A stretch of 62,961 nt of DNA, counting the filler, from Octopus bimaculoides (taxonomy: Eukaryota): the NCBI RefSeq assembly GCF_001194135.2. It is 4 parts of 4 records of this genome, joined end to end, with 100 filler letters (N's around TTAATTAATTAA, not from the genome) between each part and the next. Parts side by side here need not be neighbours in the genome. Positions count along the whole stretch, not along the records: positions 57,220 to 62,961 come from NC_068993.1; 3 more parts are not named here. The stretch is one strand, 5' to 3'. A program made the translations under genes and the position numbers. The notes beneath the pieces are model-generated. The model did no database searches and had not been told where the DNA came from. It was given only the letters and a program-made list of their open reading frames with translations. This document shows, piece after piece, positions 60,564-62,236 of this stretch; positions within the stretch are counted from its first letter, which is position 1; every line of letters begins with the position of its first letter.

Positions 60564-62005
60564 TTAATCAGACTGTTTTGTATAAATTTGATGATTTTTT
60601 CCTGTCATTTTATTCATTCCCCCAGGGCGTGATGTTGATAACCCGCAAACATATTTGAGAAGTGATAGTGAAGGAGATTCAGAATTTTTTCTGAGAATAT
60701 GCACTTTCAAGTCTTTTTCAAAATTGCAGTCGTTTGAAAGAAAGTGTTCGGCAAGTTCTATCGAACTACTGTTATTGTACCTGACGTCAAATCTATGCCC
60801 ATTGAATCTTTTGTTTAATTGTTCTGTTGTACAACCAACACAAATCAAGTTGCGTTTCGTGCATTCTGTCGGGTACACCAAATGGGAATTTCTACGAGTT
60901 CCACCTTCTGTATAAATCATAACATCTCTGCTATGATTCCTGATGGAATTCATTTGACTCATGTTGCTGCACAATGAACAGTGCTTACCTCTCTTGCGGC
61001 TGCTTTTCAAGGTACAACGTGCAGATACTACAATGTTCGTTTTCTTGGAATCAGATATAGAGGTCAATAATTCTCTTATATTTTTATTTCGTCTAAAGGC
61101 TCTAATAGGCGGCTGAGGAAATATATGTTTGAAACGAGGATTATTTTTCGCCACATGCTGGTAACTTTCATGCAACACTTTTGAAATGCTAGTGAATCAC
61201 TAAAAAAATTGTAATCTATTGAATTGTGTTTGTAAGAATTATGCATGAAGTTTTGCCTTTCTTTGCTAACCTTATCTATCTCAGTTGTTATTTCCTTTAA
61301 TCGTGATTCAATGTAACCACGTTTGACATAATGATGTACAAACGCCGTTGCACGTTTCCAGGAAACCCCTATGTCAGTACAAATCCTCAAAAATTGGGAT
61401 TTGGGATTTGACCGAATTATATGATGTGGATGATCGGAGCGGCGGTGGAGGTAAATGTGGGATGACGTGGGCTTGCAAAATAACTCTGTCACTATTCTGC
61501 CTCCAGAAATCTTAACTTTTGTGTCCGAAAATTCAACGCTAGTTTTTGAAAAACTAGACGTTAACTTTATGTTGCACTTAAAGCCGTAGCTTTTAGTATA
61601 ACTGTCACAGAAATGCAAAAAGTCAATTAAACTATCCTGTGATCCTTCCTAGTCTAAAAGGAAGTCATCAGTGAACCGTAACCGGAGTATTGGTTCATGA
61701 CCGTGAAGGGATTTGAATGTCTTCAGTAACTGTGTCTCGAATTTCATCATGAAGACATTAGCAAAATTAACTGCCATGGGTTACCCATGGCTCAACCCTT
61801 CGTCCGGTGGTAAATCTTTGTCTAAACTTCAGAGTAACACAAACCTCAATAATCTACAGAGAAAATTTGATGGAATACTTTTGTTTGACCGCTTTTCGAA
61901 GGCATCCATGCATGCTTCTATCCCTTCATCGTGGTCAATCTTGGGATATATGGAAGAAACATTCATGGTTACCAAAAAACAGTTCTCGACACGTCCTCAG
62001 TACAA
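60564..62005 (-). mobile_element. Penelope-like element: RT, CxxC-containing linker and GIY-YIG endonuclease; pseudogenised and 5'-truncated
   Basis: LVTMNVSSIYPKI.HDEG; AMGNPMAVNFANVFM; LRFTDDFLL; TELFCKPTSSHIYLH..SDHP.H...S.PKSQFLRIC; CSLCSNM; HLVY..ECTK..L.CVG.T...LNKRFNGHRFD...LAEHF. Several frameshifts and stops. Confidence 0.92.
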
Positions 62006-62236
62006 GTCTCAGTCTAATATTTGCGACGCGACCAATGCGGAAGGCCGACCGTTTGTCGCGACCGTGCGGCGAGCGTGAGTGCGCCGCCTTGGACATGCCG
62101 AGCGGGCGCCGGCGGCGAGGGGTAGCTGCGGAACGCCGTTTTTCGGCTCGACGCCTGGGTGCTATCTGCGATCGTGTCTTCGGTTGCATGTATTAGCTCT
62201 AGAATTGCCACAGTTATCCATTCTCCTCACGGTAAG
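62006..62236 (-). pseudogene. 18S rRNA gene fragment (5' region with GC-rich V2-type expansion)
   Basis: 62182-62220 reads TGGATAACTGTGGCAATTCTAGAGCTAATACATGCAACC on the minus strand, a highly conserved 18S segment. It is followed by about 160 bp of GC-rich sequence and GCAAATATTAGACTGAGAC, which resembles the conserved GCATTTATTAGA motif closing V2. Outer limits are uncertain. Confidence 0.8.

What the first reader, a model, noticed from the sequence alone, without database searches (positions are those of the whole stretch)
61700..62236. 18S rRNA fragment fused, same strand, to the 5' truncation point of a Penelope-like element
Seen: on the minus strand an unmistakable 18S segment (62182-62220) runs through a GC-rich expansion and an 18S-like GCAAATATTAGAC motif, then passes with no spacer (about 62005) into the PLE RT region (...TCTEDVSRTVFLVTMNVSSIYP). 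Established: retro-chimeras with the geometry [cellular RNA 5' piece]-[3' part of element] arise by RT template switching, as in U6-L1 chimeras. Inference: the PLE RT jumped from its own RNA to 18S rRNA, or this PLE lineage inserts into rDNA/18S pseudogenes. I do not know of either as a common PLE behaviour.
Basis: partly seen in the sequence, partly recalled or inferred. Interest (0 to 1): 0.75.

Follow-up and report, generated by a model that had tools for sequence, protein, structure and literature searches.

The report
18S rRNA piece joined to truncated Penelope element
A dead, 5'-truncated Penelope-like retrotransposon in what is probably an octopus genome carries a short internal piece of 18S ribosomal RNA at its broken end, in the same orientation; this is most simply a one-off copying accident of the element's reverse transcriptase, and I could not check it against reads or other genome copies.

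Summary
Partly confirmed. On the minus strand, 62221->62167 is real 18S. It matches Rfam SSU_rRNA_eukarya positions 139-172 and is 87-100% identical to Rfam-verified 18S genes. The 18S starts abruptly, and nothing else in the piece is rDNA. A decayed Penelope-like element (RT plus C-terminal GIY-YIG) lies on the same strand from about 62001 to about 60283. Its homology to an Octopus sinensis copy begins about 6 codons before RT motif A.

Between the two lies a 143-nt block of 70.6% GC, followed by GCAAATATTAGACTGAGAC. I could not show that this stretch is 18S, because no cephalopod rDNA was reachable. Three things make a native V2 expansion plausible:
- A degenerate 18S motif hits only this site in the window.
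- The ends of the block can pair.
- Coleoid 18S is reported to be long (mean 2275 bp) and GC-rich.

Best reading, confidence 0.5: the PLE reverse transcriptase switched template from PLE RNA to 18S rRNA, leaving a single inert chimera.

An rDNA-targeting PLE lineage is unlikely. There is no 18S on the far side of the element, the O. sinensis copy has no rDNA nearby, and both copies end at trinucleotide repeats.

Interest is modest.

The parts
62167..62221 (-). Verified 18S rRNA fragment, about positions 139-195 of the eukaryotic SSU. It covers the hairpin at model positions 139-172 and the start of the next helix.
   Evidence: Rfam match 62221->62188. blastn to Rfam-verified 18S loci gives 38-54 nt at 87-100% identity. 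The sequence upstream is not 18S.
62024..62166 (-). GC-rich block of 143 nt (70.6% GC, CpG o/e 1.48). It is possibly the lineage-specific V2 (helix 10) expansion of coleoid 18S. Its identity is unproven.
   Evidence: Composition is. There were no hits in protein databases in any frame and no Rfam hit. Its ends pair in the minimum-free-energy fold, but the overall z-score is +1.65. Coleoid 18S averages 2275 bp and 60.3% GC (PMC2841657).
62006..62023 (-). GCAAATATTAGACTGAGAC. It resembles the conserved 18S motif GC(W)TTTRTTAGAYYRAGAC that follows helix 10.
   Evidence: It is the only match in the window to GCHHTTRTTRGAYY with up to 1 mismatch, with 0.21 expected. Fixed 26-mer scans did not place it above noise.
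62002..62005 (-). Four bases (TTGT on the minus strand) that cannot be assigned to either partner. This is the junction.
   Evidence: Alignment with the O. sinensis PLE copy and with real 18S.
60283..62001 (-). 5'-truncated, decayed Penelope-like element. It comprises RT from motif A onward, a GIY-YIG endonuclease (ORF 60564-61178) and a 3' UTR (60283-60563). Its defects are in-frame stops at 61829-61831, 61781-61783 and 61649-61651, a frameshift in the A7 run at 61202-61208, and a D->N change in motif A at 61961-61963.
60266..60282 (-). (ATT)n remnant immediately after the PLE 3' end. The O. sinensis copy has (GTT)n at the same place.
62222..62290 (-). Upstream flank, which is (CT)n-rich and not 18S.

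Best explanation
This is a one-off chimeric retrocopy, now an inert relic. While a PLE RNA was being copied into a nicked AT-rich or (ATT)n target, the PLE reverse transcriptase left its own template about 6 codons upstream of RT motif A. It then continued on an 18S rRNA molecule at about the TTAGAC..GAGAC motif just 3' of helix 10. It copied back through the V2 region to about position 139, where synthesis stopped and the cDNA end was joined to the target.

Shown: the two partners, their shared strand, the PLE breakpoint, the abrupt 5' end of the 18S, and the native PLE 3' end.

Inferred: that the GC-rich block is native 18S V2, that the join happened at the RNA/cDNA level, and that it happened once.
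For: - The 18S core is verified and in sense with the PLE.
- PLE homology stops at about 62001, while full-length relatives continue for at least 190 aa upstream.
- The PLE keeps its own 3' end, next to (ATT)n, as does the O. sinensis copy next to (GTT)n. This fits the reported ATT/AT-rich cleavage preference of a PLE protein (PMC11167929).
- No rDNA lies on the far side of the element or elsewhere in the piece.
- An 18S-type motif occurs exactly once in the window, on the right strand and next to the junction.
- Coleoid 18S is long and GC-rich.
- There is no repeat of 20 nt or more at the junction that could cause a mis-join.
- From established knowledge, template jumping is a documented property of non-LTR RTs (R2, L1) and produces U6-L1-type chimeras.
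Against: - This is a single locus. No reads, second assembly or other copies could be examined (searches found nothing on record).
- The GC-rich block could not be matched to any 18S and folds no better than shuffled sequence (z = +1.65).
- No target-site duplication brackets the 18S+PLE unit.
- The 18S piece does not reach the 5' end of the RNA, unlike typical U6-L1 chimeras.
- My two literature searches on this found no description of PLE template switching onto cellular RNAs.
Confidence: 0.5

Rival explanations
1. There were two separate DNA-level events. Either a dispersed 18S pseudogene fragment (an rDNA 'orphon', or rDNA/cDNA filler captured at a break) was already present and a 5'-truncated PLE landed next to or inside it, or the rDNA piece was captured as filler during end-joining at the PLE's 5' junction.
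For: - No TSD shows that the two parts entered as one unit.
- The 18S piece is internal, with abrupt ends.
- Four unassignable bases sit at the junction.
- The locus is a dense patchwork of repeats.
Against: - The PLE would have had to land exactly at the edge of a piece of about 220 nt, or cause a target deletion, because no 18S follows the PLE 3' end.
- The same-sense orientation would be a coincidence (50%).
Confidence: 0.22
2. The 18S core and GC-rich block belong to another repeat family, for example an rRNA-headed SINE or satellite, or a different rDNA-derived sequence. It merely abuts a truncated PLE.
For: - Only 55 nt are provably 18S.
- The GC-rich block has no match anywhere and carries an internal imperfect repeat.
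Against: - The 18S-type motif lies at the expected place after the block.
- There is no similar sequence in the 22-kb O. sinensis locus.
- The known length and GC content of coleoid 18S explain the block more simply.
Confidence: 0.1
3. Assembly artefact: rDNA reads were mis-joined to a PLE copy.
For: - The assembly is gap-filled. A run of 10 N is flanked by an unmerged 43-nt overlap at 57973-58068.
- Complex PLE insertions are reported to cause assembly problems, especially in short-read assemblies (PMC8557442).
Against: - It would need two false joins within about 220 nt, one on each side of the 18S piece.
- There is no shared repeat of 20 nt or more at the junction.
Confidence: 0.1
4. This PLE lineage targets rDNA or 18S as its insertion site.
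For: Only the adjacency itself.
Against: - There is no 18S on the 3' side.
- The O. sinensis copy of the same family has no rDNA within 10 kb.
- Both copies end at trinucleotide microsatellites.
Confidence: 0.03

Closest known systems
U6-L1 and other L1 chimeric retrocopies, formed by template switching during target-primed reverse transcription
   Same: A piece of cellular non-coding RNA sits in sense orientation at the 5' end of a 5'-truncated element that keeps its native 3' end. The junction is direct or nearly direct.
   Different: The enzyme is a PLE RT (telomerase-related, with a GIY-YIG endonuclease), not a LINE RT. The partner is 18S rRNA. The RNA piece is internal (about 139 to about 240) rather than starting at the RNA's 5' end. 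No TSD was seen, and only one copy is known.
R2 template jumping and R2-28S co-transcripts (from my own knowledge)
   Same: An rRNA sequence is attached to the 5' end of a retroelement copy. The RT is able to continue on a second template.
   Different: R2 sits inside 28S rDNA and has rRNA on both sides because of its target site. Here there is no rDNA on the other side and the locus is not rDNA.
rDNA-specific retrotransposons (R1, R2, R4-R9; R7 and R8 in 18S). R9 is cited in PMC8557442; the rest is from my own knowledge.
   Same: A retroelement lies next to rRNA gene sequence.
   Different: Those are non-LTR elements with a fixed insertion site and rDNA on both flanks. Neither feature is present here.
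Canonical EN+ Penelope-like elements (PMC8557442, PMC11167929)
   Same: The RT motifs, the C-terminal GIY-YIG, frequent 5' truncation, and insertion next to AT-rich or microsatellite DNA.
   Different: No hammerhead ribozyme, pseudo-LTR tandem or inverted partner copy was detected at this locus. PLEs are reported to retrotranspose host genes in trans, but no rRNA chimeras turned up in my searches.
Dispersed rDNA pseudogene fragments and rRNA-derived SINEs (5S-derived SINE3, 28S-derived SINE28; from my own knowledge)
   Same: A short rRNA-derived sequence lies outside the rDNA array.
   Different: There is no evidence of a repeated family here, and the fragment is fused to a PLE body rather than a SINE tail.

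Membership tests
Penelope-like element (EN+) | PLE-type reverse transcriptase motifs | tested here: met
   phmmer E 2e-99 to proteins carrying RVT_1 + GIY-YIG. The alignment shows VTM(D>N)VSSxYP, MAVNFANxFM and RFxDD. Pfam itself does not score the decayed copy.
Penelope-like element (EN+) | C-terminal GIY-YIG endonuclease in the same ORF | tested here: met
   The ORF 60564-61178 aligns to the GIY-YIG region of P0001, P0002 and P0005 (xxYxxECTKxNLxxxGxT...RFNxHRxD). Pfam finds PF01541 in P0002, and the database lists it precomputed for P0001. It was not found in the window copy itself.
Penelope-like element (EN+) | Hammerhead ribozyme in a pseudo-LTR, with a tandem or inverted arrangement | tested here: not met
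   There is no hammerhead family at E<=10 in 60150-60620 or at E<=1 in the whole piece. There is no second PLE copy in the piece. The copy is truncated and decayed, so this does not exclude membership.
Template-switch chimeric retrocopy (U6-L1 type) | The cellular RNA piece and the element are in the same sense, with the element's native 3' end retained | tested here: met
Template-switch chimeric retrocopy (U6-L1 type) | Direct junction with no unrelated spacer | tested here: inconclusive
   The spacer is at most 4 nt if 62006-62166 is 18S V2. It is about 165 nt of unidentified GC-rich sequence if not.
Template-switch chimeric retrocopy (U6-L1 type) | The whole chimera is flanked by one target-site duplication | tested here: not met
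   The longest shared word between the two flanks is 7 nt and is not at the ends. I did not establish what TSDs PLE insertions normally leave, so this weighs little.
Template-switch chimeric retrocopy (U6-L1 type) | The RNA piece extends to the 5' end of the donor RNA | tested here: not met
   The 18S starts at about position 139. The conserved upstream GCGAATGGCTCATTAAATCAG is absent.
Template-switch chimeric retrocopy (U6-L1 type) | Independent copies with different breakpoints in the genome | not testable with these tools
No window ORF is on record.
rDNA site-specific retroelement | rRNA gene sequence continues on both sides of the element | tested here: not met
   There is no rDNA match at 60100-60300 or elsewhere in the piece.
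rDNA site-specific retroelement | Other copies of the family sit in rDNA | tested here: not met
   The O. sinensis copy (L001) has no rDNA-like sequence in 22 kb. This is one copy only.
18S rRNA (SSU_rRNA_eukarya) | Match to the covariance model at its gathering score | tested here: not met
   22.5 bits against a gathering score of 50, over model positions 139-172 only. It is a fragment, not a gene.

The most novel reading that the evidence does not exclude
The PLE reverse transcriptase of this octopus lineage switches onto ribosomal RNA repeatedly. The genome would then hold a population of 18S-PLE (and perhaps 28S-PLE) chimeras with varied breakpoints. That would be the first evidence that PLE RTs, the closest relatives of telomerase RT, make LINE-like chimeric retrocopies of abundant cellular RNAs.
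Probability: 0.1. Interest if true: 0.6.

Novelty: new member of a known kind. Interest (0 to 1): 0.3.

Why it matters
How PLEs integrate is poorly understood. The first in vitro study of a full-length PLE protein is from 2024 (PMC11167929).

A genuine cDNA-level chimera between a PLE and a cellular RNA would be natural evidence that PLE RT can jump templates in vivo, as LINE RTs do. It would also show that PLEs can scatter rRNA fragments through a genome.

As a single decayed copy with an unverified middle segment, this locus is only an anecdote. It becomes informative only if a genome-wide search finds more such junctions.

Tried and rejected
I therefore ran no read laying and did not guess run ids.
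2. Exact look-ups of seven window ORFs, including three that span the junction, found nothing on record.
3. A six-frame concatenated translation of 62003-62236 searched against 5.8e9 proteins gave no hit. A full HMMER search of the 84-aa sense ORF against 1.84e9 representatives gave 0 hits. No native cephalopod 18S ORF could be recovered this way.
4. Exact scans for the boundary between the 18S core and the GC-rich block in metagenome and viral contigs gave 0 hits.
5. MAFFT alignment of the fragment with real 18S misplaced the long insertion and was uninformative.
6. The RNA fold of the whole fragment shows no excess stability (z = +1.65), so structure gives no support.
7. The TSD search found nothing.
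8. The hammerhead search found nothing.
9. Rejected: an internally deleted PLE whose own 5' UTR holds the 18S-like piece. The O. sinensis copy, which extends well upstream, has no similarity to 62003-62961.
10. Rejected: bacterial or contaminant origin of the GC-rich block. It is flanked within 220 nt by eukaryotic sequence on both sides.
11. I left the third homologous-protein search unused, because no query would have answered the open question.

Full report
**What is in the sequence**

Only 57220-62961 is real sequence. I read the region on the minus strand.

An Rfam search of 61950-62300 finds SSU_rRNA_eukarya model positions 139-172 at 62221->62188. All 34 positions agree with the consensus hairpin, at 22.5 bits and E 2.6e-4. 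This is below the family's gathering score of 50. The search of the whole piece at E<=1 did not list it. On Rfam evidence alone, then, it is a short fragment.

To get real 18S genes for comparison, I scanned metagenome contigs for the 27-nt core and obtained 22 loci. I tested four of them with Rfam, and all four are confirmed 18S or complete rDNA units.

blastn of five such loci against the piece gives one credible match, listed below. The other significant hits are A-rich low-complexity matches at 60495-60560, and the rest are weak.
- 62220/62221->62183 is 100% identical over 38-40 nt.
- The match extends to 62178 at 97.7% over 43 nt.
- The match extends to 62167 at 87% over 54 nt.

The 70 nt upstream of the core, a (CT)n-rich flank, show no similarity to the universally conserved 18S sequence that should precede it. 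The 18S piece is therefore real, internal, and starts abruptly at about position 139.

**The Penelope-like element**

Three-frame translation and the ORF list show a decayed PLE on the same strand.

A read-through of the broken frames, with X at each stop, hits proteins carrying RVT_1 and GIY-YIG domains at E 2e-99 and 39% identity. It also hits Octopus sinensis LOC115222486 at 85% identity over the motif A region.

The alignment shows these features:
- RT motif A, VTM(D->N)VSSIYP
- the MAVNFANVFM block
- RFTDD
- the C-terminal GIY-YIG region

The copy has the following defects (coordinates worked out by hand):
- in-frame stops at 61829-61831, 61781-61783 and 61649-61651
- a frameshift in the A7 run at 61202-61208

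Pfam no longer scores the copy.

I fetched the O. sinensis locus as L001. It shares 80-86% nucleotide identity with window 60277-61065 and 61701-61986. It also shares two other repeats at 74-77%. The host is therefore very probably an octopod.

In the fine alignment, homology to the PLE runs up to about 62001 (AC[T/C]GAGG...). Upstream of that point, L001 continues with PLE coding sequence while the window does not. Full-length relatives have at least 190 more residues upstream.

At the 3' end, both copies stop at ...GCTCTT(C/T)GTCTT..CTATT. In the window this is followed by (ATT)n, and in O. sinensis by (GTT)n.

**The stretch between the two**

The stretch 62166->62024 is 143 nt of 70.6% GC with CpG o/e 1.48. 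It is followed by GCAAATATTAGACTGAGAC (62023->62006) and then four unassignable bases (62005->62002).

I could not obtain any cephalopod 18S:
- Translations in all six frames have no relatives among 5.8e9 proteins.
- The sense ORF has none among 1.84e9 representatives.
- Exact scans for the core/GC-rich boundary found nothing.

Evidence that the stretch is native 18S V2:
- In the real 18S genes, the helix after ACATGC closes just before GC(W)TTTRTTAGAYY. A degenerate pattern built from those genes, with up to 1 mismatch, hits the window exactly once. That hit is at 62011-62024 on the minus strand, with 0.21 hits expected anywhere. By my own estimate, the chance of such a hit on the right strand within 200 nt of the core is about 0.004. 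I chose the pattern after seeing the data, so this figure is generous.
- The two ends of the block pair with each other in the minimum-free-energy fold.
- Coleoid cephalopod 18S genes average 2275 bp and 60.3% GC, against about 1750 bp in most molluscs (PMC2841657). Large GC-rich insertions are therefore expected.

Evidence against, or neutral:
- Fixed 26-mers from real 18S match this site no better than other AT-rich places in the piece.
- The fragment folds no better than shuffled sequence (z = +1.65).
- The block carries an internal imperfect direct repeat.

I put the chance that 62221->62006 is one colinear 18S piece at roughly three in four.

**Surroundings**

Nothing beyond the PLE 3' end resembles rDNA, so the element does not interrupt an 18S gene.

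No target-site duplication brackets the 18S+PLE unit. No hammerhead ribozyme, pseudo-LTR tandem or inverted partner was found.

The O. sinensis copy has no rDNA-like sequence in its 22-kb locus, and no similarity to the window's 18S, GC-rich block or upstream flank. This argues against two ideas: an rDNA-targeting lineage, and a PLE family that carries the 18S-like piece in its own 5' region.

The junction has no repeat long enough to cause a mis-join, and an artefact would need two false joins within about 220 nt. However, the assembly is gap-filled (a run of 10 N between duplicated 43-mers). Complex PLE insertions are also reported to cause assembly problems (PMC8557442).

**Mechanism**

The best-supported reading is a template switch.
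1. The PLE protein nicked an AT-rich or (ATT)n site. A purified PLE protein prefers ATT and AT-rich DNA (PMC11167929).
2. It began copying PLE RNA.
3. About 6 codons before motif A, it continued on 18S rRNA near the TTAGAC..GAGAC motif.
4. It copied back to about position 139.
5. The cDNA end was then joined to the target.

The same-sense orientation, the intact PLE 3' end, the near-direct junction and the lack of rDNA on the other side all fit this reading. The RNA-level nature of the join is inferred, not shown.

The rivals are these:
- two separate DNA-level events, either a pre-existing rDNA fragment or filler capture (0.22)
- a different repeat that merely abuts the PLE (0.10)
- mis-assembly (0.10)
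- an rDNA-targeting PLE lineage (0.03)

**Comparison and verdict**

The structure works like U6-L1-type chimeric retrocopies. It differs in the enzyme class (PLE), the partner RNA (18S), the internal start of the RNA piece and the absence of a visible TSD.

My two literature searches on this found no description of PLE-rRNA chimeras or of PLE template switching onto cellular RNA. PLEs are reported to retrotranspose host genes in trans (PMC8557442).

As a single decayed copy, this is a new member of a known kind and of modest interest (0.3). It would become notable only if a genome-wide search showed recurrent junctions.

Noticed in passing
window 57973-58068: A run of 10 N (58016-58025) is flanked on both sides by the same 43-nt string. 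This is a scaffold gap with an unmerged overlap, so the assembly is of the gap-filled kind.
   Followed up: no
window 58565-59299 and 59447-60028 (+ strand): Two 5'-truncated LINE-like 3' pieces share a C-terminal domain (..KPDIIxKD..CLLIDMxxP..N...K..K..KYKDL.IEI..) with a weak zf-RVT hit. Each is preceded by an (AAT)n or (GAT)n array. 59677-60162 is 74% identical to O. sinensis L001 13581-14060.
   Followed up: partly
window 57875-58418: A repeat of about 540 nt (77% identical to O. sinensis L001 12795-13286) lies between two (AAT)n arrays. It may be a retroposon with a microsatellite tail.
   Followed up: no
window 60266-60282; L001 about 12800-12830: The PLE 3' end abuts (ATT)n in the window and (GTT)n in the O. 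sinensis copy. This suggests that the family inserts at trinucleotide microsatellites or adds them.
   Followed up: partly
L001 10001-11958 (O. sinensis CM016878.1): The annotated protein LOC115222486 is a gene model built on a decayed PLE copy. That copy lacks the equivalent of window 61066-61700.
   Followed up: partly
window 62036-62058 and 62127-62145: There is an imperfect direct repeat of about 20 nt (TGCGGAAsGCCG..TTTkTCG) inside the GC-rich block, with its copies about 90 nt apart.
   Followed up: no
window 59508-59647: A compound microsatellite, (ATA)n followed by (ATG)n with ACG interruptions. It produced spurious weak Rfam snoRNA hits.
   Followed up: no
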